IMG/VR virus record: IMGVR_UViG_3300005965_000002
Location: 124,001 to 188,000 of that record
Direction: 5' to 3' (one strand)
Length of the DNA: 64,000 nucleotides
The notes under the pieces are model-generated. The model was not told the DNA's origin. It saw nothing but the letters and a program-made list of their open reading frames with translations, and made no database searches. Both the position numbers and the translations under genes were made by a program. Positions 94 to 31,731 of this stretch are shown here, in pieces; position 1 is the stretch's first letter, and each line of letters starts with the position of its first letter.

Positions 94-975
94 ATGGAAC
101 AACCTATTACCAATGAACTTAAACAAGAGATCATTGGGCAGTATCTGAAGACTGCTGCCGGTCGTCAGAAGCTGGCTGCCAGCATGATTCAGCCCCTGCG
201 TCTGCGTCGTGACTACACCTCCGTGGCTCGTAAGGCCTTCTTGGTCGAACAGCTTCCGGATGGTGCTCTCCCGATCTATGACAAAGATCCCAATGTGACT
301 GCTTTTGTGGTCGGAGAAGAAGGCGAGAACATTCTCGCTATTACACGTCCTCGCCGTGTAATTTTCCCTCTCTTCGAGATTGCATCTAACCCTGAGATCC
401 CGTTGACACAGGTTAAAGAACGCCGTTTCGATCTTATCGAACGTAGCCAGGATCTTGCTAAAGCACAGATTCAGGCCGCTGAAGATGGTCGTGCATTTGA
501 CGTTCTCGATGCCGTTGCTAGCAATGGTTTTGATAACCTCGGTAGCGCTTATACAAACGCTCCGGTCAACGCTACAGCTCCTCTGACACCTAGTGACATG
601 ATTGATGCCTTCGCACGTATCGAAACTCATGACCTTCGTGTTGCTAGAGTTTTCTGTAACGCTCTGGACTTCGCTGACATCCGTAAGTGGGGTCGTGATG
701 TTCTGGATATCGAAAGCCAGGCTACTCTTCTGCGTACCGGTCTGATGGCCTCTGTTTGGGGTGCTCAGATCATCGTTACCAGAAAGGTCGCCCCGGGTTA
801 CATCTACGTTTGTGCAGAACCTGAGTTCCTAGGCCGTATACCGGTCAGAACAGAACTAACGGTTCTCTCAGCCGATGATCCGAAGGCTCGCCGTATAGGA
901 TTCTCTGTCTTCGAGAACCTTGGGATAGGAGCACATAATCCGCTTGCAGTCACGCGGATTCGTATAGCTCGCTAA
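94..975 (+). CDS. Major capsid protein (HK97-like fold, inferred)
   Basis: 293 aa, strong RBS (ggagg), biased high-expression codons (cgt, gct), followed by a strong terminator. Segments (FEIASNPEIPLTQVKERRFDLIER; GLMASVWGAQIIVT; RIGFSVFENLGIG) resemble large-phage MCPs. Confidence 0.82.
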   Translation: MEQPITNELKQEIIGQYLKTAAGRQKLAASMIQPLRLRRDYTSVARKAFLVEQLPDGALPIYDKDPNVTAFVVGEEGENILAITRPRRVIFPLFEIASNPEIPLTQVKERRFDLIERSQDLAKAQIQAAEDGRAFDVLDAVASNGFDNLGSAYTNAPVNATAPLTPSDMIDAFARIETHDLRVARVFCNALDFADIRKWGRDVLDIESQATLLRTGLMASVWGAQIIVTRKVAPGYIYVCAEPEFLGRIPVRTELTVLSADDPKARRIGFSVFENLGIGAHNPLAVTRIRIAR

Positions 976-993
976 GTAAATTCTTAGTAAAGT

Positions 994-1030
994 AAAAAAT
1001 CCCGGTATTTTTATATACCGGGATTTTTTT
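994..1030 (+). terminator. Rho-independent terminator (possibly bidirectional)
   Basis: aaaaaatcccggtat...ataccgggattttttt inverted repeat with A and T tracts after the MCP stop. Confidence 0.85.
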
Positions 1031-1061
1031 ATGCCCACATACGACCCAAAAAAAGGTATTA

Positions 1062-3032
1062 TTGGATATTGATAAATTTTTTGGCGATATATATATTGTT
1101 AATATGAATAAACTAGATGAAATCAGAGAGAAAATTAAGAATGGCTCTTCCTATGAGGAACTATCCAAGGAGTATCCTTTAACGATAAATGGATACAAGA
1201 AACTGGGAGGAGTAATAAAAAAGAAGAGAAAAGTAAATAGCCATTCGGTAGCTGCTGTATACGGGAAAAAGTTAAAGGACGGATTAAATACTATAGATAT
1301 AATAGTTCAAGATGAACAAAAAGGTAGAGAAAAGAAATTAAACAGATCTCATATTATAGGAACATTACTAGGAGACGCATCTATAATAGTCACCACAAAT
1401 AAATGCTACCGTAGAACTTTTTACTACACAGTGGCACATACATGGAGACAGATAGAATACACTAAACTTAACTATGAAAAATTAAAGCCATACGTATCCA
1501 GGGTTAATATATCGGAGCCTAGAGATTGTGACGGTTTTAAAGATCACTGTATTTATATAAATACGGAAAGTACATCTGATTTTTTAGAATATTACGATAT
1601 GTTTTATACCCATGGAAAAAGAGATTGTAATCCTAAGAAACATGTTTTTCGCAGCAATATAGCTACAGAAATAGATGTAGAAGTACTATCGTTTTGGTTA
1701 ATGGATGACGGTAATCAGAGGGGAAAAGCAAAAGGTGTATTTGAGTTGACCATAGGAATGCAGGATTTTTATACAGAGAGAGAAGTAAAATGCTTTGTTG
1801 ATATTCTAACAGATAAAATAGGTATACCTTTCTATTACAACTTTGGTTCTACTTCTATCGAGATATATAATAAAATAGAATCATCAGAAAAGGCTATTCA
1901 GTTATTATCTCCGTATATTATCCCTGACTTAAGTTACAAATTGGGTTTAGAACCTGACATGTGCGGTTCTGTTTATAGAGGTGAGATTTGGTATAAAAAC
2001 TGGCAAAAAAGTAGGATAAATATACAGCACCCCTTTTTAGAAGATAATGACATAGAAGACTACAGAAGATCTAAAGATCCAAAGTTTAAGGAAATGTTTA
2101 GAAGAGCTCTTTTATACCGTACGAAAGTAAGAGGGTTTCCACACGCATCTTATTCTAATTCAGAATTACTTGATCTATGGAATAATTTAAAAGAGAGTTC
2201 TTACGAGTGTGTTGAGGCGTATTTAAAACCTAATTACAATTTAAATAGATTTCCCAGTTATTTTTTCCCTAATAGATTCCGGTGTATTAAGAAAGGTCAT
2301 AAATCTGCTGTAGAGGTATTTAACAATAATAAGGATTTATCAAAGGTAATAGATAGACAGCTAAAATCAAAGGACAATATAAACAACAGTAATATAAGGA
2401 ACGCTATAGGTGGATACGGTGCTCCAGTACCCGCTCAGTTTAACCCGGCTTATGCTAGGTACTTCATTGCTAAATATAGTAATGAAGGGGACTTGATATT
2501 AGACCCTTCTGCAGGATGGGGTAGTAGACTAGCTTCATCTATTTCTTTAAATAGAAGTTATTACGGTATAGAGCCCAATAGTGAAACCGTAACAAACTTA
2601 AATAAAGAGATTTCTTGGTTTAAGAATAACAACATAGATGTTAATGCTACTATAGTAAAGGGTTGTTCAGAGGATATAGAATCTTATAGGGGTATTAAAT
2701 TCGATATGGCAATTACTAGTCCTCCGTTTTTTGACAAGGAGGTTTATAGTTATGAGGATACACAATCGATAAGAAGATACTCAGATTTTGAAGAGTGGTG
2801 TGAGAAATTCTTAAAGGTAATGATTTTAAATACATTTAATTCTTTGAAAAAAGGAAAATTTTTTGTACTAAATGTAGCTAATTATTCTGACTGTCATTTA
2901 GCATATATTTCTAAGTACTTGTTAAAAGATGTGGGGTATTCTATAAAGGATATAGTCTATACAAAACCTGTTTCTAGACCAGTTTCCGGTAAATCGTTAA
3001 AAGAGGAATTTATAGTAGCGGAGAAAATATGA
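1062..3032 (+). CDS. LAGLIDADG endonuclease - amino-DNA methyltransferase fusion
   Basis: IIGTLLGDAS and LSFWLMDDGN (LAGLIDADG_2-type motifs); C-terminal LDPSAGWGSRL (SAM motif I) and ITSPPFF (motif IV); TTG start, alternative ATG slightly downstream. Confidence 0.85.
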   Translation: MDIDKFFGDIYIVNMNKLDEIREKIKNGSSYEELSKEYPLTINGYKKLGGVIKKKRKVNSHSVAAVYGKKLKDGLNTIDIIVQDEQKGREKKLNRSHIIGTLLGDASIIVTTNKCYRRTFYYTVAHTWRQIEYTKLNYEKLKPYVSRVNISEPRDCDGFKDHCIYINTESTSDFLEYYDMFYTHGKRDCNPKKHVFRSNIATEIDVEVLSFWLMDDGNQRGKAKGVFELTIGMQDFYTEREVKCFVDILTDKIGIPFYYNFGSTSIEIYNKIESSEKAIQLLSPYIIPDLSYKLGLEPDMCGSVYRGEIWYKNWQKSRINIQHPFLEDNDIEDYRRSKDPKFKEMFRRALLYRTKVRGFPHASYSNSELLDLWNNLKESSYECVEAYLKPNYNLNRFPSYFFPNRFRCIKKGHKSAVEVFNNNKDLSKVIDRQLKSKDNINNSNIRNAIGGYGAPVPAQFNPAYARYFIAKYSNEGDLILDPSAGWGSRLASSISLNRSYYGIEPNSETVTNLNKEISWFKNNNIDVNATIVKGCSEDIESYRGIKFDMAITSPPFFDKEVYSYEDTQSIRRYSDFEEWCEKFLKVMILNTFNSLKKGKFFVLNVANYSDCHLAYISKYLLKDVGYSIKDIVYTKPVSRPVSGKSLKEEFIVAEKI

Positions 3033-3868
3033 AAATAGTATGTAAAATATGCGGGCACTCAGGATTAGACATATCATCGCATATAAGGCTAAAGCACAAT
3101 ATCTCTATTGTAGAGTATCGTGAAAAGTATAAATGCAGAGTAGTTAGTCCAGAGATAGATAAGAAAAGAAAAGAAACTACAAAGAAATTGTATGGGGATC
3201 CTAATTGGCGTAATAAAGACGCTCAAAAATTAATGTTCTCTGATTATAAAGGCGGGCATCCGTTTAAAGATCCTGAATGTAGAAAAAAAGCGTGTAAGAC
3301 AAAAGAAAAATTATATGGGGATCCTAATTACACTAATAGAGAAAAAGCAAAGAAAACTAATTTGGAGAGGTATGGGACTGAATATACATGTGCTTCAGAG
3401 CAAGTGATAGAAAAAAGGATAAAGACTCTAAAAAGCAGGTATGGGAAAGTATTTAATGTTGAGGAACCACATAACAAGACAAAACCTCCAGAAGATTTTA
3501 AGGAAGTATTTATTAAGGAGGGTTTGACATATGATGCCCTGTCTTATAAGTACGAAGTCTCTGTCCCTACTATAAAAAGGTGGGTAGACGAGCTATCTTT
3601 AAAAAGAGAACCTGTAAAATCTTCTGAAAAGAGCTACGAATCACCTGAAGAATTAGTATCAAAGTACTTGGATACATGTTACGAACTATCGAAACCTTTA
3701 TCATTTTATGATTACGGCAAAATAAAAGGTGGGAAGTATTGTAATAGACTTAAGAGGTTATTTAATAAAGGAAAAAAGTTTGAGCATATCAAACCCTTAT
3801 TGAATAGAGCAGTTACAGATCAGTCATTAAAGCATAAGGTTCTGTATGAAATGGAATCTCCGCTATAG
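3029..3868 (+). CDS. C2H2-type zinc finger / basic repeat / HTH protein (homing-endonuclease-associated architecture)
   Basis: CKICG...SHIRLKH; repeats KKLYGDPNW, KLYGDPNY, KKTNLERYG; HTH-like YEVSVPTIKRWV; ATGA overlap with upstream gene. Confidence 0.7.
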   Translation: MKIVCKICGHSGLDISSHIRLKHNISIVEYREKYKCRVVSPEIDKKRKETTKKLYGDPNWRNKDAQKLMFSDYKGGHPFKDPECRKKACKTKEKLYGDPNYTNREKAKKTNLERYGTEYTCASEQVIEKRIKTLKSRYGKVFNVEEPHNKTKPPEDFKEVFIKEGLTYDALSYKYEVSVPTIKRWVDELSLKREPVKSSEKSYESPEELVSKYLDTCYELSKPLSFYDYGKIKGGKYCNRLKRLFNKGKKFEHIKPLLNRAVTDQSLKHKVLYEMESPL

Positions 3869-3960
3869 ATATCTTTATGTTTTTTTAATTATAAATACTT
3901 TTTTGTATATTAGAATGAGCGTTAGATAATTCTTGGTTTCTAATAAAGGCCGGTAATAAT

Positions 3961-6000
3961 ATGCATAAGATATCAGATGATACTATAAAAGAGCTAATAA
4001 TCGATAGGAAAATGACAGATCACCAGGCAGCTAAGTATTTAGGTGTAAGCCGCATGACCGTATCTAGGAGAAGAAATAAAATAGGTATAGATCAGAAGCC
4101 TAAGCGTCCTGATGGTTACTATGAATTAACAGCGGAGCAGGAAAAAGAGTTAGAAAGGCACTACAACGAAGGTAGGAACGATTACGAAGTTTCAGAGTTA
4201 ACGTGTTTAGGCAGGAACAGATTACGTGAGTGGAGAAAAAAAAGAGGAATACTCTCTAAGTCTAATAAAAAAGGCTTAGGCAAAGAGGATGCTGAGAAAG
4301 CGATACTAATGAGAAATAGTGGTAGCACATATGAACAGATAGCTGCTGAGTTTGGTGTTAAAAGAACATCAATATCAAAACTACTTAAAAGAAGCGGGTA
4401 TAAAGAAGATAATATGTATAGGCCCACCAGCCCTAAATGGGCTGAATCCTATACTCTTACCAATGACCAGAGGTCTGTCATAATTGGAGATCTTTTAGGA
4501 GATGGTACTTTAGTATCTACTTCAGAAGAAAACGCATACTATCAGTCAGGCCACTCGAATTATCAAGAATTTTTTATAAGATGGAAATATAGTGTGTTAT
4601 CTCCGCTGACTTCGAGTGTGGGTAGTAAAAAAGATTATAGCGCTTACTCTGTAAAGACTTGGACATGCCGAGAACTAGGAGCATTAAAAAAAGTTTTTTA
4701 TCCCGAAGGTAATAAAGTTATTAATAAAGAGATCGCAGACACCATTAATGAGATCACGCTAGCAGTTTGGTATATGGGAGATGGGTCGTTAATTAGGAAA
4801 TCCCCTTATATACATATAGGCAAACAAGTGGATGCAAGTGTTTTTAAGGAATCCATTTTAAGGAATTTAAGCATATCTTCCTATGTGAGGGACTACAGTA
4901 AAGAGAGTCACTTAGTATTTGAGTCCGATTCTTTCTTTAAAAAAACGGCTCCATACATATTACCAGAATTTTATAAAAAGGTTCCTGAAAATTACCACAC
5001 TAACTTAGGGAAGTACTGGTCTGATAAGAGTTTGTTTCCTTATGTAACTTCTGATATTTATTTAAGATTACCGGATAAAGATAAGATACAAGTAGTTAAT
5101 GCTTTGTGCGCTTATTATAGAAAAAAAGGTTTTCCTTACCCGAGATGCAATAGAAGGGAGTTGCTCAAGTCTTATAAGTCTTTTTTAGATAAGGATAATG
5201 AGGTAGCAGCATTTAAGATATGTAACCATTTTATGCCTCATAGATATGATTGTCGTAGGTATGATAGCAACCCGATGGAAAATTGGAATAATGATAAACT
5301 TTTTAGAAAGTTTATTATTAACAGACTAACTTATGGAAAAGGTTATATATCAGATTCTGTCATTAGGACAGGTATGCAACTAAAAGGTGTAGTAGCTAAT
5401 TTCAGCCCTATGACTGCCCGTTACATCTATAATAACTATTTACCGGAAGGAGGATCTTCTCTAGATTTTAGTTCTGGTTTTGGTGGCAGGCTGCTTGGGT
5501 TTCTGGCTTCAAAACCCTCCGGTACGTATTTAGGTGTGGAGCCTTTTACAAAGTCTTATATTGGCTTAGAAAAAATGAAGGAATATTTTTTAGACCACAA
5601 CAAATCTAAGTCCGTAGATATAGTAAAATCTCCTTTTGAAGACTTATGTGGTAAACTTAGTGGTGGCTCGTTTGACATGGTATTTTCTTCTCCTCCTTAT
5701 TATGGCTTAGAGATTTATAGTGAAGACTCTACACAGAGTTTTATCCGTTACCCTAAATATGAAGATTGGCTAAATAACTTTTGGTATTTGGTTTTAGATG
5801 AAAGTATAAGGGTGCTGAAGAGGTCAGGTCATCTTATTTTTTCGATAGGAAACTATAAAAATTATGATCTAATACACGACACTAAATATTATTTAAGGCA
5901 GAAGAGCGTAGAAGAGAAAGGTTCCATTAATATTCATTATAAAAACGTATACCTTAATTCTAAGAAGAAAGAAGATGTATTCGTGTATAAAAAACTTTAA
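3961..6000 (+). CDS. HTH - LAGLIDADG endonuclease - amino-DNA methyltransferase fusion (second paralog)
   Basis: N-terminal HTH repeats (AAKYLGVSRMTVSRRR; IAAEFGVKRTSISKLL); IIGDLLGDGT and LAVWYMGDGS; LDFSSGFGGRLLG and VFSSPPYY. Confidence 0.85.
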   Translation: MHKISDDTIKELIIDRKMTDHQAAKYLGVSRMTVSRRRNKIGIDQKPKRPDGYYELTAEQEKELERHYNEGRNDYEVSELTCLGRNRLREWRKKRGILSKSNKKGLGKEDAEKAILMRNSGSTYEQIAAEFGVKRTSISKLLKRSGYKEDNMYRPTSPKWAESYTLTNDQRSVIIGDLLGDGTLVSTSEENAYYQSGHSNYQEFFIRWKYSVLSPLTSSVGSKKDYSAYSVKTWTCRELGALKKVFYPEGNKVINKEIADTINEITLAVWYMGDGSLIRKSPYIHIGKQVDASVFKESILRNLSISSYVRDYSKESHLVFESDSFFKKTAPYILPEFYKKVPENYHTNLGKYWSDKSLFPYVTSDIYLRLPDKDKIQVVNALCAYYRKKGFPYPRCNRRELLKSYKSFLDKDNEVAAFKICNHFMPHRYDCRRYDSNPMENWNNDKLFRKFIINRLTYGKGYISDSVIRTGMQLKGVVANFSPMTARYIYNNYLPEGGSSLDFSSGFGGRLLGFLASKPSGTYLGVEPFTKSYIGLEKMKEYFLDHNKSKSVDIVKSPFEDLCGKLSGGSFDMVFSSPPYYGLEIYSEDSTQSFIRYPKYEDWLNNFWYLVLDESIRVLKRSGHLIFSIGNYKNYDLIHDTKYYLRQKSVEEKGSINIHYKNVYLNSKKKEDVFVYKKL

Positions 6001-6080
6001 AAAGTGCGTACAAAACAGTATATTAGATTAACTTGATATTATTATCTCATATCAAAAACAAACAACATGAGGAGGCCCTA

Positions 6081-6278
6081 ATGGCTATTGCGGTAAAGAA
6101 GCCGCTGTCGAAGACAGCTCGAATCAAGCTTGTGCGTGCTGCTAAAAAGCAGGCAGGTAGAATGAAGCGTCCGGACATGATTAAGATGGTTCGGGACATG
6201 GACACCCGTGTTACCACAGCTGAAGCCGGTAAGATTGTAACCGAAGCTAACCAGGCAACAAAGGCTAAGAAGAAGTAA
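6081..6278 (+). CDS. Small basic K/R/A-rich protein, possible DNA-binding core protein
   Basis: ATG at 6081 after gaggagg RBS; 65 aa, ends KAKKK; followed by terminator. Confidence 0.6.
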   Translation: MAIAVKKPLSKTARIKLVRAAKKQAGRMKRPDMIKMVRDMDTRVTTAEAGKIVTEANQATKAKKK

Positions 6279-6402: not shown

Positions 6403-7080
6403 ATGAAAAAGACCATAACTTCTAATATTCTAGTATTTGCCTTTACGATATTAGAGAAGAATGCTCCTATAGAGATTGAAAACAAGTACGGGATAAAGGT
6501 AGATGAATCCGTAGAAGGTAAGTTTGCTGTTTTAATTCTCAAGGCTCTCGATAGGCTTCCTTTAGAGTTAACTAAAGCTTGTGGTATAGTTTCATTAGGA
6601 ATAAAGGATTTAGGTCCTTCTAAGGAATATTATCCCAACCATGGAGTCTACGTATCTAATACTCTTTACCTAAATAAATGGAATACCGAAGATCCCTGGG
6701 TAGTTGAGGATTCATCGGGTAATAGGTTAGATAGGTTCGACCACACCTTATACCATGAGATGGGTCATGGCTTAGACGAAGTACTGGGAGGTGAAAAAGA
6801 CCTTTCACTTCAGCCAGAATGGTTAGATTTGTCTGGGTGGAGCCCAGAGCCTAAAGATGGTTTAAAAAGAGTGATTATTCGTGAAGCAGGATCCCCTGAG
6901 TTAGTAGGGGAGTGGTGGTACAATCCGGAGGCTGGGTACACTAGATTTTATGCTAAAAGAAATCCTTGGGATGATTGGGCAGATAGTTTTGCTTATTATG
7001 TAGCAGGACTTAAAAGTTATCTTCCTGAATCCAAAATCAGTTATTTCAATAAGTTAATAGGCAAATTTTTCAAGGAATAG
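6403..7080 (+). CDS. Zincin-type (HExxH) metallopeptidase-like protein
   Basis: TLYHEMGHGLDE plus downstream YAKRNPWDDWADSFAYY, matching the Y-x3-N-x2-E-x-F-A-E pattern of lethal-factor/Zmp1-like zincins but with Asp substitutions. Confidence 0.7.
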   Translation: MKKTITSNILVFAFTILEKNAPIEIENKYGIKVDESVEGKFAVLILKALDRLPLELTKACGIVSLGIKDLGPSKEYYPNHGVYVSNTLYLNKWNTEDPWVVEDSSGNRLDRFDHTLYHEMGHGLDEVLGGEKDLSLQPEWLDLSGWSPEPKDGLKRVIIREAGSPELVGEWWYNPEAGYTRFYAKRNPWDDWADSFAYYVAGLKSYLPESKISYFNKLIGKFFKE

Positions 7081-7082
7081 AT

Positions 7083-7880
7083 ATGAAGGAAGTAAGAAAT
7101 TATTTAGATAAATTAGCCGTGAAGCTAGCCAGCCATGGGTTTGAGGATTTTGCTTTTGATGTGTGGGATGCGGGTACCTCGATAATGAGGTACGCTTCTT
7201 CTAACCAGGTAGAGGAAGCTGAAAAAAGATATTACGAAACAAAAAAAGTAGATGATTTAGTAGAGTATCATAACTCGGGGCAAATGGATAGAGACATCGC
7301 AACTATGATAAAGGGCGGGAAGTCTTATAAAGAGATAGCAGAGAGAAAATTCAAGCAGATCCAACAGGATAACCCGCCGTATGCGCACGATCAAGGAGCT
7401 AAACAGTTAGCAGAAAGTTTAATGCGCGGTGTTCAGAGGGGTGCCATAAGAGCAGCTTCTTTGATTATGTCTAGAATGGCATGTTATCTAAAGGACCTGG
7501 GTTATGATAATGAGGCTCAGATACTGCATAGCTCCTTTTCTAAGGTAGCATCTAAGGGCCGTAACGTAGGTGATAAAGTAGAAAATTTTCAAGTAATTTC
7601 TCTTGAAGAAATGTATGAAAATTCTACTCACAAAGCTGAGCAGAAACCAATATTAGAAAATATCCAAATAATGGTTAAAACATATGAATCTGTACTAAAG
7701 CTTATTAAGAAATTTAAGAAAGATTACGAGAAGCTTATAAAGGTTTACTTGAAACAAACAGGTGAAGAAGTAGACAAAAAAGAATTAGAAGAATATTCAA
7801 CTAAAATGGTAGAGTTAATCACATACTATGACACTGCAATCAGTAATGAATTCAGGTCTCTCGCAAAGGCTATGGTATAG
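7083..7880 (+). CDS. Hypothetical head-associated protein
   Basis: 265-aa ORF with two copies of an amphipathic helix motif and RYAS/RAAS/KVAS sites. Confidence 0.6.
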   Translation: MKEVRNYLDKLAVKLASHGFEDFAFDVWDAGTSIMRYASSNQVEEAEKRYYETKKVDDLVEYHNSGQMDRDIATMIKGGKSYKEIAERKFKQIQQDNPPYAHDQGAKQLAESLMRGVQRGAIRAASLIMSRMACYLKDLGYDNEAQILHSSFSKVASKGRNVGDKVENFQVISLEEMYENSTHKAEQKPILENIQIMVKTYESVLKLIKKFKKDYEKLIKVYLKQTGEEVDKKELEEYSTKMVELITYYDTAISNEFRSLAKAMV

Positions 7881-8175: not shown

Positions 8176-8444
8176 AAAAATCAGATATTCTACCATCTTT
8201 GGAGTACTATATGCCAAACCCAAAGGATTATGATAATAAGCAAGATTGGATGGATGCCTGTATGTCCCAACAAAAGGACGAAGGCAAAAATATGAAGAAA
8301 GAAGATGAGAGGGATCAGGCAGTAGCCATTTGTCTAAATATGTGGAGAGATAAGAATAAGAAGACTGCCAGTAAGGGCAAGGTAGCGAGCGCCGCCAAAG
8401 CTTTATATAAATTATCAAAGAAATTAGAAGATCTTGGAAAGTAA
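8172..8444 (+). CDS. Small phage head-associated protein
   Basis: PNPKDY...WMDACM...DQAVAICLNMW pattern typical of small phage head-region proteins; KTAS/KVAS sites. Confidence 0.55.
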   Translation: MKKSDILPSLEYYMPNPKDYDNKQDWMDACMSQQKDEGKNMKKEDERDQAVAICLNMWRDKNKKTASKGKVASAAKALYKLSKKLEDLGK

Positions 8445-8445
8445 A

Positions 8446-9669
8446 ATGAAATATCTCATATCCGATTCCCTGAGACGTATTGCATCCGCTTTAGAAGTTG
8501 ATCTAGATAATGTTAAGAATAGCAAAAAGCCGGTTGTTTTCTTAGGTGGAAATGCTTCTGATAATTCCTGGAGAGAAGATATAAAAAAGGAATTTTCCGA
8601 TAAGATTATGTTTTTGGATCCCTTTGATAAAGATTGGGAAGCAGAAGAAAACATATATAAGGAATTAGAAGCATTGATGAAATCGGACAACGTCGTTTTC
8701 TATAAGGGCGGAGAAGGATCTGAAAAAGAAAAAGAATTTCTTGATCAGGTCAAAAAAAGTAATTACGAAGATTTTGACGACTTGAGCGAGCTAAAGAATT
8801 ATCTAAAAAAGATAAGCGGTAAAATGGAAAAAACTGCTTATCCTATAGTAGGTCAACCCGCTTCTGACCTTAAGTTGGAGAAGCTCGATAAAGAATCCAT
8901 CGAGGCTTTAATAGAGGATTTAAAACAGGGTGTGGATATTAAGGTAGACCCAGAAGTAAAAAAGATTCCCAATATGTCCGATTTGCATGAGTTGAAAGCT
9001 GAAGACATAAAAAAAGAGATAGCTAAAGGTAATCCTTTTTTAAAAGTGTTGCTTGATAAGTATAAGAGTTTACCCGGGAGTAAAAACCCAGCGCTCAAAT
9101 ATGATAAAGAAAAACATATGTATATACCAACTGAATTGGGGCAAATGAGTAAATCAGCAAAGCAAGGAATGGTATATGACCGGAGTTCTACTCAATATGA
9201 TTTTCCTGAATTAATAGCTGATAAAGTTCTGCGCTGGTCTAAAAAGAATGTCCCGGATATTGCACTAGGAGAAGATGGCAGAGAAGATGAGATTCATGTT
9301 ACTATTCTTTATGGGTTGTTTACTACAAATCCTTCCGAAGTAGAAGATATTATAAAAAAGTATAACATAGAACCTTTTGAGATAAGACTATCCTTAATTA
9401 CTGCTTTTTTAAATGGTGACCAGGATGTTTTGAAGATAGATGTAGAATCCTCTGGACTCCACAACCTCCATAAGCTACTCCAAGAAAATATCAAGAATGA
9501 TAACAAATATCCGGAGTACCGACCCCACGTAACTATAGCCTACCTTAAAAAAGGCGAATCAGAAAATTACATAGGTAGAGATGATTTTCAGGGAATATCG
9601 TGCAAGGTGAATAATATTGTTTTTAGCTCCAGAACGGGCGATAAAATAGACATTCCTCTTATTGGTTGA
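8446..9669 (+). CDS. Nucleoside 2-deoxyribosyltransferase-like domain + Acb1/T4 gp57B-like 2H phosphodiesterase
   Basis: N-terminal VVFLGG...SWRE...FLDPF...DW...E; C-terminal two HxT motifs EIHVTILYG and YPEYRPHVTIAY; ATG at 8446 preferred over TTG at 8434. Confidence 0.75.
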   Translation: MKYLISDSLRRIASALEVDLDNVKNSKKPVVFLGGNASDNSWREDIKKEFSDKIMFLDPFDKDWEAEENIYKELEALMKSDNVVFYKGGEGSEKEKEFLDQVKKSNYEDFDDLSELKNYLKKISGKMEKTAYPIVGQPASDLKLEKLDKESIEALIEDLKQGVDIKVDPEVKKIPNMSDLHELKAEDIKKEIAKGNPFLKVLLDKYKSLPGSKNPALKYDKEKHMYIPTELGQMSKSAKQGMVYDRSSTQYDFPELIADKVLRWSKKNVPDIALGEDGREDEIHVTILYGLFTTNPSEVEDIIKKYNIEPFEIRLSLITAFLNGDQDVLKIDVESSGLHNLHKLLQENIKNDNKYPEYRPHVTIAYLKKGESENYIGRDDFQGISCKVNNIVFSSRTGDKIDIPLIG

Positions 9670-22002: not shown

Positions 22003-26643
<4,641 letters not shown>

Positions 26644-27772: not shown

Positions 27773-29305
27773 ATGTCAGTAGCTTTTTATCCGGGTCAAA
27801 CGCTAGAAAGCACAGACCTTAATATTATCATAAGAAACGACACAGGAACCCCTGTAGATCCGTTTTATATTCGTTACTCGCTTTTTGATAATACTACTGG
27901 TATTCCCGTCCTTATAGGAGCTCCAAATAGAGTGCCCGCGACCACCGGGGTTGGTAAGTACTATGCAAATGCTACTTTACCACTAGATTCCAATATAGGC
28001 GATTGGATGATCCATTGGGATTTTAGAGAAACCTCAGGCAGTCCGATGGTACAGGTAGTCCAAGAATTTAATGTAGTGGACCAGGAAGTACGAATAACTG
28101 TATCCGATAATAATAACATGAATGATATGATCCGTAGAGTCAGAGTGCTCTTGCGAGACAATAATCCCGACAGAAATTATCGCTTCAGACCACCAGCTTC
28201 AGAAAAGTTCCTACAATCTCAAGCACAGGTTTTTGGTTATATCTGGGAAGATGAAGAAATACTTGAATACATTTTAATGGCTATTGATGACTTTAATGCT
28301 GCCCCTCCTGTAACCGGGGTAACTATAGATAGTATCCCGCTGAGATGGCGTACAGCCGTTATTCTTAGGGCTTGTTCGTTTGCCTGTTTTGCTATTGCAA
28401 TGAACTGGATAGCTGATGAGTTTTCCGTAAAAGGGGACGAAAAGGTTAAGGTTAAGGACGAGGAAGGTAACGTTTATGAATTATCATTAGAAGAACTATT
28501 TGATGTAATATATGGTGATAAAATTTTGGAGATGGAGAAAGAAGTACGGGACGAATATAAGAAAGTTATGAAGGAACTAGATAGTGATCAATTAGTTATG
28601 AATAGAGAAAAAAACACATTTGTAAAAACCATAAAAAAAGTTTTCAGGAAGATAAAGGATATCCTTGTAAAGAAAAAAGCATACAATGTTGATAAGATAA
28701 AAGAATCTTTTTATAAAGGTAGGCTAGAAGTAAAAAGCTTATCGGAAGATAAGGGGAATGTTGATTGGGTACCTATAAAGGATATATATAGGCACAATTC
28801 CCTATATAAAAAGATGATAAAGGTAGTTACGGATAAAGGAGATGTAGTAGTAACCGACGACCACAGTTTGTTTTCTTGGGAGACAAAAAAGCCTATAGCA
28901 GCTAATAAGTTGAAGATAGGGTATCCAATAATAGCTAATGAAAATAATATTTTAGTAAAAGCTGTCATAAGAAGTATAGAAGATAATCCCGCCGAAAATT
29001 ATACATATGATTTATGCGTACCTGGAACCGAGAGCGCTTTTTTGTCCTCTGGTATTTTGGTTCATAATTCTTATACCATATCAGGCGTATCTCTGGATGT
29101 TGATAAAAGTGCAAAATATGAAGGTATGAAGAACAACTTTATCACTGAGTATGATAAGTTAAAAGAACAAGCCAAGAGATCTATTAAGATCATCCGTGGC
29201 CTTCGTCAACCGAGATACGGTGTGGGCATTTCCTCAGCACTCGGACCCTATAGTAGCCCGGGTGTCCAAGCCCGCCGCAACTTTATATCTGGCTTTAGAA
29301 ATTAA
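27773..29305 (+). CDS. Neck / head-tail connector protein interrupted by an intein
   Basis: IRRVRVLLRD...WEDEEI...AIDDFN connector-like core; exteins join as WIADEF|SYTISGVSLD. Confidence 0.7.
   Translation: MSVAFYPGQTLESTDLNIIIRNDTGTPVDPFYIRYSLFDNTTGIPVLIGAPNRVPATTGVGKYYANATLPLDSNIGDWMIHWDFRETSGSPMVQVVQEFNVVDQEVRITVSDNNNMNDMIRRVRVLLRDNNPDRNYRFRPPASEKFLQSQAQVFGYIWEDEEILEYILMAIDDFNAAPPVTGVTIDSIPLRWRTAVILRACSFACFAIAMNWIADEFSVKGDEKVKVKDEEGNVYELSLEELFDVIYGDKILEMEKEVRDEYKKVMKELDSDQLVMNREKNTFVKTIKKVFRKIKDILVKKKAYNVDKIKESFYKGRLEVKSLSEDKGNVDWVPIKDIYRHNSLYKKMIKVVTDKGDVVVTDDHSLFSWETKKPIAANKLKIGYPIIANENNILVKAVIRSIEDNPAENYTYDLCVPGTESAFLSSGILVHNSYTISGVSLDVDKSAKYEGMKNNFITEYDKLKEQAKRSIKIIRGLRQPRYGVGISSALGPYSSPGVQARRNFISGFRN
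28424..29068 (+). mobile_element. Mini-intein (215 aa, Ser1, no endonuclease)
   Basis: Starts SVKGDEKVKV; block B VVVTDDHSLF; block F YTYDLCVPGTE; ends ILVHN followed by Ser. Confidence 0.85.
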
Positions 29306-31731
29306 TTTTCTTTATTGATTATATTTATTTGTCTTTTTATCCATCTTTTATTTTCATTTAAATGCTCAGCCATTTCTTGATATGTCATAGTGCCCCTATT
29401 ATTCTTTATAAAGTATATTTTATATTTATTTTTTCGGCTTTTAGTACTACCTATAGGATTCTTCGGAGACAGAATTCCATCTTTTATCATAGATCTTACT
29501 CTGCCACTGACCCATCTTTTAGTTTCGTTTAAGTTTATAGCTATTTTTTCCTGGGTCAAGCTTTGGTAGTTATCTAAGATATATTGATCTTTTTCTTTTG
29601 TGATTCTAGAGTTGTTACTTATCCTTTTGCTTGTTCTTTTGTTTTTAGATATTTTTATCAAGTTACTATAAAAGTCGCTAAAATCATCAACGGGTACACT
29701 ATTTCTTTTAGGGTAAACTTTATCTTTATATGTTTTAAGCTTTTCCAAAATTTGTTTTTCTCTTTTGTTACAGCTTGTGAGAAGTGCGTATTTATGTTTT
29801 TTTGAGATAGGTATCTTTACTGATTTATTAATAATGGATTTTATATCTTTGTACCACTGATGTAATATTTCCTTAGGTATCTTTTTTATATTTTTATATC
29901 CGTTGTCTTTAAACCATTCACTTTTAGTTTCTATTCCTTTACTTTTGCACCAAGCTTTAAAAGCTGAAGTTCTTTTTAAGCTTTGTTCAGAGAAGGGTAA
30001 ACCATTTTTAATTTCTTTATTTTGGTATACATAACCGGTTCCGAAATCATCCCCAAGATACGAAAAGTTACAACTTTGATATATAGTACCTATTTCATTT
30101 GCCTTTGGATCTGCGTAGCAGACAAATAGCCTCTTAGGTGTGTTTTTAGTCATCCACTTACAGGAAAACATTATTAACCTACTCCCTAGGTTTTTCGGTG
30201 TCCATGAAGCAGTAGCTCCCCGTTGTATAAGGGCTTCAAAGTGTTTCGTATTCTCTCCTAATAACTTAGAATAAGAGTTTGGCTCATTAATTAGAACTAC
30301 GCCGCCCAAAAATCCTTTATATCGTGCGGTAAAAACCCATTTAGGATTGTTTCCTATTGTACCTAACCATTCATACTTTTCTATAAAGTGTTTAATTTCT
30401 TTTGTATATTTTTCTTGCTTTAGCACAAAGTCTTTTGCCTTTATCTTTGAATAGTCAAAGCTTATATTTTCTAAATCATTTTTTAATGTAGATACTTTTA
30501 TTTTGTATTGATGGCAAACAGATTTAGACGCTTTTTTGTTTAACTCATCGGTGATAAATTCTATAATATCTCCTTTTTTTTCATGGTCTACGACCAACCT
30601 GGAGTCAAATCTTACTAAATTATCTATAACGGAGTTTTGCCTTTCATCTCTAATAGATGTTTTTAAGATATTTTCCTTTCTAGGCCCTTTCTTAAAATCT
30701 TTAATCTTACCATGCCAGAAATATCCATCATATTGTACCCACACGTTAATAGATGGTAGATAGAAATCAATATTAGATTTTGAAATAGGGTGGTATACCT
30801 GGAACTCGGTATAGGGGTCTATCTTTTTAAGATACATAAGAAATTTTATTTCTTCATCGGAAGAGCTAAAGGTATTTTTTTCTTTTGATGTGTTTAATAC
30901 TTTTTTATAGATTTCCTCATTCTGCAGGGGGCTAGGTACTCCATATTTTTTAATGTTGGTTTCTTTTATTTTTTCTTTTGTAGGTTCATCCTGAAATATG
31001 TTGTCTACTCCATACTTTTTGTTTAATGTAGATTTTACCTTATTCCTTACTGCAGGGTCTTGGGAAGGATACTCTACTCCTCTTCTTTTAAGATTAGTTT
31101 CTCGGCTTTTTCTTTTCATAGATTCTAATTGAGTGGTGTACTGCACTCCGTATTTAGCTTGTACGGCTTTGGAGGTACCTAGGACATTGTCTTTTTTTAT
31201 AATATCCGGGTTTCTACTTAGACCCAATTGGTTAGCTTTATACCTAATAGATTTCCATGATCTACTAAATTTATTGATTAAAAATTCTTTAGTATTGTTG
31301 ACATATATTTCTTTCAAAAGATTTATTTCTTCCTCTTTCCAGAAATCTTCTCTTTCTGGTACTTTTTTACCACCTTCAATAGATTCTTTTTTTACTATTT
31401 CCGGATCTCTCCTTAAACCCATTGCATAAGCTTTCCCCCAAATTCCAGACCAGGGTCTATTTAATTTGTCTTGGATTTCTTTTTTAGTACCAATTGGGTA
31501 TATTGACTTAAGAGTCGATAACTCTTCCTCGGACCAGGAATCTTTTCTTTTCCCCCTAGTGGCTCGGTCTTTTCCAATCACAGTGGCGTCTCTTTTTAAT
31601 CCTAGCTTTTTTGAGCGTCGATAGATAGTAGCCCATTCTTTATCGAGTAGTTTAGTCAATTCCGATTTTCTTTTATTTTCAAAATTTTCTCTTAGGATCT
31701 TATCTTCTTCAGGAGTCCATCGTTTAGCCAT
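29302..31731 (-). CDS. Myb-like repeats + basic repeats + DUF559/Vsr-like nuclease + Mom-like GNAT domain + HTH fusion
   Basis: 3x W(T/S/K)xEE..L..LGL.R repeats; KKYGV repeats; IDFYLP...VQYDGYFWHG; FIEKYEWLG...KNLGSRLI...YADPKANEIGTIYQSCNFSYLG; two terminal HTHs; only credible minus-strand gene. Confidence 0.8.
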   Translation of the reverse strand: MAKRWTPEEDKILRENFENKRKSELTKLLDKEWATIYRRSKKLGLKRDATVIGKDRATRGKRKDSWSEEELSTLKSIYPIGTKKEIQDKLNRPWSGIWGKAYAMGLRRDPEIVKKESIEGGKKVPEREDFWKEEEINLLKEIYVNNTKEFLINKFSRSWKSIRYKANQLGLSRNPDIIKKDNVLGTSKAVQAKYGVQYTTQLESMKRKSRETNLKRRGVEYPSQDPAVRNKVKSTLNKKYGVDNIFQDEPTKEKIKETNIKKYGVPSPLQNEEIYKKVLNTSKEKNTFSSSDEEIKFLMYLKKIDPYTEFQVYHPISKSNIDFYLPSINVWVQYDGYFWHGKIKDFKKGPRKENILKTSIRDERQNSVIDNLVRFDSRLVVDHEKKGDIIEFITDELNKKASKSVCHQYKIKVSTLKNDLENISFDYSKIKAKDFVLKQEKYTKEIKHFIEKYEWLGTIGNNPKWVFTARYKGFLGGVVLINEPNSYSKLLGENTKHFEALIQRGATASWTPKNLGSRLIMFSCKWMTKNTPKRLFVCYADPKANEIGTIYQSCNFSYLGDDFGTGYVYQNKEIKNGLPFSEQSLKRTSAFKAWCKSKGIETKSEWFKDNGYKNIKKIPKEILHQWYKDIKSIINKSVKIPISKKHKYALLTSCNKREKQILEKLKTYKDKVYPKRNSVPVDDFSDFYSNLIKISKNKRTSKRISNNSRITKEKDQYILDNYQSLTQEKIAINLNETKRWVSGRVRSMIKDGILSPKNPIGSTKSRKNKYKIYFIKNNRGTMTYQEMAEHLNENKRWIKRQINIINKEN

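What the first reader, a model, noticed from the sequence alone, without database searches (positions are those of the whole stretch)
1062..6000. Two tandem LAGLIDADG endonuclease-DNA methyltransferase fusion genes right after the capsid gene
Seen: both ORFs carry a two-motif LAGLIDADG domain with acidic residues retained (GDAS/MDDG; GDGT/MGDG), a shared linker (RGFPH/KGFPY), and an amino-MTase (DPSAGWG/DFSSGFG...SPPF/SPPY). Their codon use (ata, aga, tta) differs from the MCP. Known: free-standing LAGLIDADG genes and orphan MTases are each common in phages, but a single-chain fusion is unusual. Inference: either a self-protecting homing or restriction-modification-like element that cuts unmethylated competitor DNA and methylates its own, or an MTase that uses LAGLIDADG as a long-site targeting domain.
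Basis: partly seen in the sequence, partly recalled or inferred. Interest (0 to 1): 0.78.

Follow-up and report, generated by a model that had tools for sequence, protein, structure and literature searches.

The report
Phage homing endonuclease–DNA methyltransferase fusion genes
Downstream of the capsid gene, this jumbo phage carries two real genes that each fuse a DNA-cutting homing endonuclease to a DNA methyltransferase, a widespread but apparently unstudied design sitting in a gene-swapping hot spot.

Summary
Window 1062/1104-3032 (F1) and 3961-6000 (F2) each encode an I-SceI-like single-chain LAGLIDADG endonuclease joined to an amino-methyltransferase with a (T/S)SPP(Y/F) motif IV. A third gene lies between them (3029-3868: zinc finger, DUF7487, HTH).

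The fusions are not artefacts. Full-length homologues at 22-96% identity occur in many independent assemblies. Both catalytic Asp and methyltransferase motifs I and IV are nearly invariant.

They are not rare either. The methyltransferase module has 12,626 50%-identity clusters, and about half of the best 150 carry a LAGLIDADG domain.

The 5-kb island sits between the capsid-gene terminator and the next gene's promoter. Among relatives this spot is hypervariable: empty, LAGLIDADG alone, LAGLIDADG-ParB_N, LAGLIDADG-Mom, methyltransferase alone, or the fusion. A phage with a 99.3% identical capsid protein has an F1 only 32% identical, and its F2 homologue lacks exactly the LAGLIDADG domain, in frame.

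Best reading: two stacked free-standing homing-endonuclease elements fused to a phage orphan methyltransferase that acts as linked cargo or host gene. Methylation-based self-protection is neither shown nor excluded. This is a new variant of known kinds, of moderate interest.

The parts
94..975 (+). Major capsid protein gene (293 aa). It is the left flank of the island and not part of it.
   Evidence: phrog_2522 major head protein, E 1.1e-53. 553 relatives in IMG/VR.
994..1029 (+). Capsid-gene terminator hairpin (perfect 15-nt arms followed by a T-run). The island begins just 3' of it.
   Evidence: Inverted repeat I4. Sequence. An equivalent hairpin precedes the empty site in L008.
1044..1097 (+). 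Promoter-like region for F1. It holds the motif CGACCC-N13-TATTAT, shared by six F1-type loci, and a sigma-70-like TTGATA-17-TATATT at 1069-1097.
   Evidence: Alignment of post-capsid intergenic regions. Consensus scan, 10 of 12 matches, although site counts in the region do not exceed the shuffles.
1104..3032 (+). F1: LAGLIDADG-methyltransferase fusion, 642 aa from the ATG at 1104 (656 aa from the TTG at 1062). Numbering from 1062. Small N-terminal helical domain: residues 15-90. LAGLIDADG domain: residues 94-300 (nt 1341-1961), with catalytic D105 (nt 1374-1376) and D216 (nt 1707-1709). Helical methyltransferase N-domain: residues 301-455 (nt 1962-2426). Rossmann methyltransferase: residues 456-656 (nt 2427-3029), with motif I D481-G487 (nt 2502-2522) and motif IV S553-PPF (nt 2718-2729).
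   Evidence: Pfam. Alignments A1 and A3. AF2 model, pLDDT 89, pTM 0.81. I-SceI match, TM 0.73. AFDB stand-alone methyltransferases cover residues 303-656, TM 0.73.
3029..3868 (+). 279-aa partner gene, translationally coupled to F1 (ATGA overlap). It has a Ros/MucR-type C2H2 zinc finger, four 'K..T...YG....N' repeats (DUF7487), an HTH and a conserved C-terminal helical domain. No nuclease fold is recognisable. Probably a modular DNA-binding protein of homing-endonuclease ancestry.
   Evidence: Pfam DUF7487 E 7.5e-9 and ROS_MUCR E 4e-4. About 30 full-length homologues (alignment A7), each following a LAGLIDADG gene in the contexts read. All-helical AF2 model, pLDDT 86, pTM 0.37. The only local fold matches are the Ros zinc finger and HTH proteins.
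3961..6000 (+). F2: HTH-HTH-LAGLIDADG-methyltransferase fusion, 679 aa. Two HTH domains: residues 1-165. LAGLIDADG domain: residues 170-346 (nt 4468-4998), with catalytic D181 and D274. Helical methyltransferase N-domain: residues 350-476. Rossmann methyltransferase: residues 477-679, with motif I D501-G507 and motif IV S577-PPY.
   Evidence: Pfam. Local HMMs. Paralogy to F1. The L093 allele lacks residues 175-355 in frame.
6081..6278 (+). First conserved backbone gene after the island (small basic protein; likely true start at the ATG near 6081). It is the right flank. In L008 it follows the capsid terminator directly.
   Evidence: Alignment of the window's two junctions with the empty site of L008. 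tblastn.
29302..31731 (-). Related feature elsewhere in the window: an 809-aa protein with HTH, DUF7487 and a Mom-family DNA-modification domain, low GC, and the only large gene on the minus strand.
   Evidence: Pfam DUF7487 E 2.7e-16 and Mom E 6.2e-10. GC 0.29-0.34.

Best explanation
The 5-kb island (about 1040-6030) is two stacked free-standing homing-endonuclease elements. They are inserted in the intergenic hot spot between the capsid-gene terminator and the next gene's promoter of a jumbo phage of about 259 kb. One element is F1 plus its DUF7487 partner gene. The other is F2.

Each endonuclease is an I-SceI-like single-chain LAGLIDADG enzyme translated as one polypeptide with a phage orphan DNA amino-methyltransferase. 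That methyltransferase has a helical N-domain and a Rossmann domain with motif order I then IV. Its TSPP(Y/F) motif makes N4-cytosine the probable target.

Inferred mechanism. In mixed infections with related phages, the LAGLIDADG domain cuts a long site in genomes that lack the element or carry the endonuclease-free allele. Recombinational repair then copies the element in. This explains the presence/absence pattern and the allele replacement.

The methyltransferase half is the linked cargo or host gene. It methylates progeny phage DNA and so protects it from host restriction. This gives selection a reason to keep the element, and the fusion ties expression of the selfish nuclease to a useful gene.

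Shown: the domain identities, conserved catalytic residues, insertion site, polymorphism, modularity and wide distribution. Inferred: cleavage activity, methylation activity and specificity, homing, and the benefit of the cargo.
For: Domain identity.

Not an artefact: full-length homologues at 22-96% identity come from JGI, ENA, NCBI and Logan assemblies.

Selection on both activities: both catalytic Asp are kept in 106 of 109 complete LAGLIDADG domains. Motif IV (T/S)SPP(Y/F) is kept in 185 of 196 methyltransferase domains.

Mobility:
- Of 59 capsid-gene relatives with at least 2.5 kb downstream, 18 have the fusion, 13 have LAGLIDADG without this methyltransferase, 4 have the methyltransferase without LAGLIDADG, and 24 have neither.
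- Empty sites occur in L008, L018 and L020.
- In 28 pairs among eight F1-type loci, F1 identity does not track capsid identity (Spearman 0.18, p 0.36). The window and L093 have capsid proteins 99.3% identical but F1 only 32% identical, with no nucleotide similarity across 976-3172.

Modularity:
- The L093 F2 allele (70% identical) lacks exactly the LAGLIDADG domain.
- LAGLIDADG is fused to ParB_N or Mom in other relatives.
- LAGLIDADG alone, plus DUF7487, precedes a DNA-modification gene cluster in L094 and L095.
- LAGLIDADG and methyltransferase identities are only moderately correlated (Spearman 0.40).

Cargo is an ordinary phage orphan methyltransferase: stand-alone members of 320-400 aa dominate in other phage contigs.

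These phages are rich in homing elements, with inteins in nearby genes.
Against: No cleavage or methylation has been measured, and no target site is known.

Persistence of a LAGLIDADG gene at the same locus across capsid proteins only about 74% identical could also reflect a retained function rather than repeated homing.

The same methyltransferase family is also fused to nuclease-free DNA-binding modules: HTH, the I-TevI DNA-binding domain and DUF7487. A Mom enzyme in this window is fused to DUF7487. This suggests the partner may serve DNA targeting rather than mobility.

The repeated, independent joining of LAGLIDADG to three different DNA-modifying enzymes hints at a functional link between cutting and modification that the cargo model does not require.
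Confidence: 0.55

Rival explanations
1. Methylation-gated homing endonuclease, a single-chain restriction-modification logic. The fused methyltransferase methylates a base inside the LAGLIDADG target, so the phage's own copies are immune. Unmethylated DNA of co-infecting competitors, or of progeny that lose the element, is cut.
For: Both active sites are conserved together in one polypeptide. LAGLIDADG has been joined independently to three kinds of DNA-modifying enzymes: methyltransferase, Mom and ParB_N, the last next to PAPS_reduct/DUF3440. The same methyltransferase module is also fused to other nuclease types: Endonuclease_7, HNH_5 and TnsA-like.
Against: LAGLIDADG-only genes occupy the same site with no recognisable modification gene beside them in L053, L063 and L083. 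A LAGLIDADG-free F2 allele exists. The methyltransferase family is mostly stand-alone. Domain shuffling would repeatedly break a matched pair of cutting site and methylation site. A free-standing homing gene can already be immune through target-site changes (established knowledge of free-standing homing endonucleases, not tested here).
Confidence: 0.2
2. Domesticated targeting domain. The LAGLIDADG domain mainly supplies tight long-site DNA binding, or nicking, that positions or regulates the methyltransferase. HTH, I-TevI DNA-binding and DUF7487 modules would do the same in sister architectures. No homing is involved.
For: Sister architectures exist with nuclease-free DNA-binding modules on the same methyltransferase. 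The L093 protein is HTH plus methyltransferase without LAGLIDADG. There is a DUF7487-Mom fusion in this window. The AF2 model has a high pTM of 0.81, suggesting a fixed arrangement between the domains.
Against: Both catalytic Asp are nearly invariant across 22-60% identical proteins, which a pure binding role does not need. One extra N-terminal LAGLIDADG copy in the 1229-aa relative has lost them (GNG/DRG), showing that decay does happen when the residues are unconstrained. The locus shows the turnover typical of selfish elements.
Confidence: 0.15
3. Functionally inert remnants. The fusions are decaying homing elements or accidental read-through products without a present function.
For: Truncated or degenerate versions exist: the 157-aa and 498-aa F2-position genes in L092 and L093, a degenerate LAGLIDADG copy in L005, and fragments in L035 and L040.
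Against: The window's two genes are intact, with all motifs. There is a 96%/92% identical pair in an independent assembly (L006). Conservation of catalytic residues across the family is strong.
Confidence: 0.05

Closest known systems
Free-standing homing endonuclease genes of large phages (T4 seg and mob genes, F-CphI) and the single-chain LAGLIDADG enzyme I-SceI
   Same: Intergenic insertion next to a highly conserved gene, its own promoter, and presence/absence polymorphism among relatives. The fold is I-SceI-like with two LAGLIDADG motifs and both catalytic Asp. Details of the T4 and F-CphI systems are from general knowledge.
   Different: Here the endonuclease is translated in one chain with an apparently complete DNA methyltransferase. 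It has a conserved co-transcribed DUF7487 partner. The best-known free-standing phage homing genes are GIY-YIG or HNH rather than LAGLIDADG (general knowledge).
Phage orphan N4/N6 amino-methyltransferases (Pfam N6_N4_Mtase; phrog_12517; AFDB entries auto-annotated as cytosine-N4-specific)
   Same: Residues 301-656 of F1 superpose on stand-alone enzymes of 395-405 aa (TM 0.73). They share motifs I and IV. The stand-alone forms sit among small phage genes.
   Different: The motif order is I then IV, circularly permuted relative to the beta-class Pfam model. An endonuclease is attached at the N-terminus.
Single-chain Type IIG/IIC restriction-modification enzymes (MmeI, BpuSI and similar)
   Same: An N-terminal nuclease followed by an amino-methyltransferase in one polypeptide.
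   Different: Those enzymes use PD-(D/E)XK nucleases, recognise short sites, and are bacterial defence genes (general knowledge). Here the nuclease is LAGLIDADG, the gene is in a phage, and it lies in a mobile hot spot. Whether cleavage is blocked by the enzyme's own methylation is untested.
ShiLan element: an HNH homing endonuclease hidden inside an actinophage DNA methylase gene (PMC11855218)
   Same: A homing endonuclease physically embedded in a phage methylase gene, with a disjoint distribution among relatives and no intein or intron features. The clean in-frame LAGLIDADG indel in the F2 lineage is a comparable pattern.
   Different: In ShiLan the HNH is read in another frame. Here the LAGLIDADG domain is in frame and forms part of the methyltransferase protein.
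Inteins carrying LAGLIDADG domains
   Same: An in-frame LAGLIDADG domain inside a host protein, with precise presence/absence between alleles.
   Different: No Hint or intein splicing blocks were detected in F1 or F2. The domain therefore stays in the mature protein.

Membership tests
LAGLIDADG homing endonucleases (single-chain, I-SceI-like) | Two LAGLIDADG motifs in one chain, each ending in a catalytic acidic residue | tested here: met
   F1 has G104-D105 and D216-G217. F2 has D181 and D274. These positions are invariant in 21 fusion proteins and kept in 106 of 109 complete domains.
LAGLIDADG homing endonucleases (single-chain, I-SceI-like) | Pseudo-dimeric alpha-beta-beta-alpha-beta-beta-alpha fold | tested here: met
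   AF2 model with pLDDT 89. The best PDB matches are I-SceI (1r7m, TM by target 0.73, E 2.9e-9) and I-WcaI. Pfam LAGLIDADG_2 scores above its cutoff.
LAGLIDADG homing endonucleases (single-chain, I-SceI-like) | Site-specific cleavage of a long (14-40 bp) target and biased inheritance (homing) | not testable with these tools
   Only indirect evidence is available: presence/absence polymorphism and allele replacement at one site.
DNA amino-methyltransferases (N6A/N4C; Pfam N6_N4_Mtase) | AdoMet-binding motif I (D-x-x-x-G-x-G) and catalytic motif IV ((S/D/N)PP(Y/F)) | tested here: met
   F1 has DPSAGWG and TSPPF. F2 has DFSSGFG and SSPPY. (T/S)SPP(Y/F) is found in 185 of 196 family domains. Pfam E 4.2e-16 for F1. 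PADLOC Type II methyltransferase models match.
DNA amino-methyltransferases (N6A/N4C; Pfam N6_N4_Mtase) | Beta-class motif order (IV ... I), as in the Pfam model and in M.PvuII or M.RsrI | tested here: not met
   Motif I (residue 481) precedes motif IV (residue 553) by about 70 residues. The Pfam and PDB profile matches come as two stretches in swapped order. The Rossmann core aligns co-linearly with non-permuted enzymes such as Trm11. It is therefore a permuted, non-beta relative.
DNA amino-methyltransferases (N6A/N4C; Pfam N6_N4_Mtase) | Methyl transfer to N4-cytosine rather than N6-adenine, and sequence specificity | not testable with these tools
   The TSPPY-type motif IV and the automatic 'cytosine-N4' names of structural neighbours are only a lead.
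Single-chain Type IIG/IIC restriction-modification enzymes | PD-(D/E)XK (or HNH/GIY-YIG) restriction nuclease domain fused to a gamma-type methyltransferase and a target-recognition domain, in a cellular defence context | tested here: not met
   The nuclease is LAGLIDADG. The gene is in a phage hot spot. No C-terminal target-recognition domain follows motif IV to VIII, since only about 100 residues remain.
Single-chain Type IIG/IIC restriction-modification enzymes | The enzyme's own methylation blocks its own cleavage | not testable with these tools
   This needs biochemistry.
Inteins | Hint-fold N- and C-terminal splicing blocks flanking the endonuclease domain | tested here: not met
   No Intein_splicing or Hint match in F1 or F2 at E up to 0.1. 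Such matches are found in other genes of related phages.
Group I/II intron-encoded endonucleases | The ORF lies within a self-splicing intron RNA | tested here: not met
   No Rfam family reaches its gathering score anywhere in the window. The genes lie in an intergenic site with their own promoter-like motif.

The most novel reading that the evidence does not exclude
The LAGLIDADG-methyltransferase proteins are methylation-gated meganucleases. This would be a phage-borne, single-chain 'homing restriction-modification' system. Its fused methyltransferase (or Mom or ParB_N-linked modification in sister forms) marks the phage's own long target as self. The nuclease then destroys or converts co-infecting relatives and any progeny that lose the element. 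That would add LAGLIDADG to the nuclease folds used in restriction-modification logic, and would give a new mechanism of competition between phages.
Probability: 0.2. Interest if true: 0.85.

Novelty: new variant of a known kind. Interest (0 to 1): 0.55.

Why it matters
Homing endonucleases and orphan methyltransferases are each routine in phages. Here they are shown to form a large natural family of one-chain fusions. It spans hundreds of viral sequences and dozens of 50%-identity clusters, with both active sites conserved. I found no experimental or descriptive paper on it in five full-text searches.

If the methyltransferase is cargo, these are mobile anti-restriction cassettes that spread between jumbo phages by homing. 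If methylation gates cleavage, they are a new kind of restriction-modification system and a weapon in competition between phages. Either way they offer natural meganuclease-methyltransferase scaffolds with long recognition sites.

The clean natural variants give ready-made controls for experiments. These include an empty site, LAGLIDADG alone, methyltransferase alone, an F2 allele lacking exactly the LAGLIDADG domain, and Mom or ParB_N swaps.

Tried and rejected
- Assembly or frameshift artefact: rejected. Full-length homologues come from many independent assemblies, including a 96%/92% identical copy of the whole three-gene island.
- Intein: rejected. No splicing blocks.
- Intron-encoded ORF: rejected. 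No Rfam hit in the window, and the placement is intergenic.
- Foreign origin inferred from composition: weak. The island is only slightly more AT-rich than the phage average, and the capsid gene is the outlier.
- RNA methyltransferase reading: the best PDB fold matches of the Rossmann core are Trm11-type tRNA enzymes. I rejected this as an effect of co-linear motif order. Sequence profiles match DNA methyltransferases, and the partner modules bind DNA.
- Nuclease role for the DUF7487 protein: not supported. The model is all-helical, and the only local matches are a Ros-type zinc finger and HTH proteins.
- Direct repeats or terminal inverted repeats bounding the island: none convincing. A short imperfect repeat (GGTCTGTCATAA / GGTCTGATAA) flanks the F2 LAGLIDADG segment, but it may be chance.
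- Annotated phage genomes: only one distant match, the unannotated 485-kb LR745208.1.
- NCBIfam: no family for F1, F2 or the stand-alone methyltransferases.
- Inferring the endonuclease target site from occupied and empty junctions: not possible with three empty sites on divergent backbones.

Full report
**What is there.** The window starts with a 293-aa major head protein gene (94-975; phrog_2522, E 1e-53). Its terminator is a perfect 15-nt hairpin with a T-run (994-1029). Three plus-strand genes follow:
- F1 (1062/1104-3032).
- A 279-aa gene (3029-3868) whose start overlaps F1's stop.
- F2 (3961-6000).

The conserved backbone resumes with a small basic protein (about 6081-6278) and the genes at 6403-7080 and 7083-7880.

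Pfam finds LAGLIDADG_2 plus N6_N4_Mtase in both F1 and F2. F2 has two extra N-terminal HTH domains. PADLOC finds 'homing endonuclease' plus 'Type II methyltransferase' in both. F1 and F2 are paralogues, 27% identical over 534 residues. The middle gene has a Ros/MucR-type zinc finger, DUF7487 repeats and an HTH. No nuclease fold was recognised in it.

**Is it real?** Yes. F1 has full-length homologues at 27-96% identity from JGI, ENA, NCBI and Logan assemblies. One of these is an independent contig carrying the whole three-gene island at 96%, 90% and 92% protein identity (L006).

In 21 aligned fusion proteins the invariant columns include the catalytic Asp of both LAGLIDADG motifs (G104-D105, D216-G217). 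They also include methyltransferase motif I (D481, G485) and motif IV (S553, P555).

Across all sequences collected, both Asp are kept in 106 of 109 complete LAGLIDADG domains. Motif IV reads (T/S)SPP(Y/F) in 185 of 196 methyltransferase domains. The one clear exception is informative. An extra N-terminal LAGLIDADG copy in a 1229-aa relative has decayed to GNG/DRG.

The AF2 model of F1 is confident (pLDDT 89, pTM 0.81). Its N-terminal domain matches I-SceI (TM 0.73). Residues about 303-656 superpose on stand-alone proteins of 395-405 aa that are automatically named cytosine-N4 methyltransferases (TM 0.73).

Motif I precedes motif IV, so the enzyme is circularly permuted relative to the beta-class Pfam model.

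**How common is the architecture?** A profile of the methyltransferase module finds 12,626 50%-identity clusters at E up to 1e-3, and 2,425 at 1e-30. Of the best 150:
- 56 carry a LAGLIDADG domain by a local HMM (66 of the 159 proteins then held).
- Up to nine more carry LAGLIDADG_1, _2 or _3 by Pfam.
- Single cases carry Endonuclease_7, HNH_5, DUF7487, ParB_N or GmrSD_N.

AFDB holds a 799-aa protein with the same architecture, and a fusion of a TnsA-like nuclease to this methyltransferase. The ESM Atlas has two all-viral clusters named 'LAGLIDADG ... / DNA methylase' (255 and 57 members). It also has clusters joining this methyltransferase to DUF7487, to the I-TevI DNA-binding domain and to ParB_N.

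In a broader IMG/VR sample the stand-alone form of 320-400 aa dominates. It sits among small phage genes. The fusion is therefore common, catalogued only by automatic names, and enriched in this jumbo-phage clade. Five full-text searches found no paper describing it. The nearest report is an HNH gene hidden inside an actinophage methylase gene (PMC11855218).

**The locus is a hot spot.** The capsid protein has 553 relatives in IMG/VR. The window itself is IMGVR_UViG_3300005965_000002, 258,580 bp. Among 59 relatives with at least 2.5 kb after the capsid gene:

| Content within 4.5 kb after the capsid gene | Loci |
|---|---|
| LAGLIDADG-methyltransferase fusion | 18 |
| LAGLIDADG without this methyltransferase | 13 |
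| This methyltransferase without LAGLIDADG | 4 |
| Neither | 24 |

The fusion group includes one locus with two methyltransferase modules, and the window with two fusion genes.

The LAGLIDADG-only group includes fusions to ParB_N (L013, L024) and to Mom (L011/L012). It also includes plain genes of about 310 aa. In L094 and L095 a LAGLIDADG-only gene plus the DUF7487 gene precede a DNA-modification cluster with PAPS_reduct/DUF3440, ParB_N and others. In L058 an HNH endonuclease gene precedes a stand-alone methyltransferase.

L008 has a capsid protein 92% identical and goes straight from the capsid terminator to the next backbone gene. This defines the empty site and the island's insertion point. 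L018 and L020 are similar.

Even the distant 485-kb LR745208.1 has a 1229-aa LAGLIDADG-methyltransferase gene right after its capsid gene.

**Evidence for mobility and modularity.** Among eight F1-type loci, F1 identity does not follow capsid identity (Spearman 0.18, p 0.36). The DUF7487 partner does follow it (Spearman 0.67).

The sharpest case is L093:
- Its capsid protein is 99.3% identical (89% at the nucleotide level).
- Nucleotide similarity stops at the capsid stop codon and resumes only inside the DUF7487 gene at 3245.
- The F1 proteins are 32% identical.
- Its F2 homologue (498 aa, about 70% identical on both sides) lacks exactly residues 175-355 of F2, the LAGLIDADG domain, in frame.

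The methyltransferase nearest to F2's, apart from the near-identical L006 copy, is P0029. This is a 498-aa protein without a LAGLIDADG domain, the same length and architecture as the L093 allele. Over 83 fusion proteins, LAGLIDADG and methyltransferase identities correlate only moderately (Spearman 0.40). Some pairs are discordant, for example 25% against 57%.

The modules are therefore gained, lost and swapped.

**Composition and expression.** The island's GC (0.32-0.35) is a little below the window mean (0.39). Six F1-type loci share a motif after the capsid terminator, (A/C)TGACCC followed about 13 nt later by TATATT-like bases. This is consistent with a phage promoter in front of F1. The likely F1 start is the ATG at 1104.

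**Interpretation.** The data fit two stacked free-standing homing-endonuclease elements, F1 with its DUF7487 partner and F2. In each, the nuclease is fused to a phage orphan methyltransferase.

I rate this reading at 0.55: homing or competition by the LAGLIDADG half, and anti-restriction methylation by the cargo half. The fusion would link a selfish gene to a useful one.

A methylation-gated, restriction-modification-like self-protection model remains open (0.2):
- For it: LAGLIDADG is repeatedly joined to different DNA-modifying enzymes.
- Against it: the modules are separable.

A domesticated targeting-domain model (0.15):
- For it: sister fusions to nuclease-free DNA-binding modules, including an HTH-DUF7487-Mom protein elsewhere in this window (29302-31731, minus strand).
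- Against it: the near-invariant catalytic Asp.

Inert remnants are unlikely for these intact copies (0.05).

None of the enzymatic activities, the target sites or the methylated base could be tested here.

Noticed in passing
window 29302-31731 (- strand): The only large minus-strand gene in the window. It is 809 aa with low GC (0.29-0.34) and encodes HTH, DUF7487 and a Mom-family DNA-modification domain. This is a third fusion in this phage of a DNA-modifying enzyme to a homing-endonuclease-type DNA-binding module.
   Followed up: partly
window 8434-9669 (+): A 411-aa protein. Its C-terminal half matches the 2'-5' RNA ligase / Acb1 (anti-CBASS phosphodiesterase) families. Its N-terminus weakly matches a nucleoside 2-deoxyribosyltransferase-like domain. 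Homologues lie at the same relative position in related phages (L001, L092, L093).
   Followed up: partly
window 22003-26643 (+): A 1546-aa protein with a very strong collagen triple-helix repeat match (E 2.6e-188, 10 stretches). Its GC is 0.52 but its GC3 is 0.31. The repeats create many spurious long ORFs on both strands (23590-26335).
   Followed up: no
window 13633-17787 (+): A 1384-aa multi-domain glycosyltransferase (GT2, GT1 and GT4 domains plus TPR) encoded in the structural-gene region of the phage.
   Followed up: no
L001 1-928; L003 438-4634; L092 1-1303; L042 9448-11817: Related phages carry inteins with LAGLIDADG_3 domains. Some sit in a large gene a few kb upstream of the capsid gene, and one sits in a PAPS_reduct/DUF3440 DNA-modification gene. 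This clade is heavily colonised by homing elements.
   Followed up: no
L039 3594-6881; P0015, P0016, P0018: Some relatives carry two methyltransferase modules in one chain, for example LAGLIDADG followed by two copies of the helical N-domain plus methyltransferase module (1095-1560 aa).
   Followed up: no
window 4470-4482 and 5016-5027: An imperfect short direct repeat (GGTCTGTCATAA / GGTCTGATAA) flanks the F2 LAGLIDADG segment that is absent from the L093 allele. It could be microhomology used for a precise deletion, or it could be chance.
   Followed up: partly
L011/L012 10104-11219: In these relatives a transposase gene (phrog_506, E 6e-102) lies between the capsid gene and the HTH-LAGLIDADG-Mom gene. 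The hot spot therefore also collects transposable elements.
   Followed up: no
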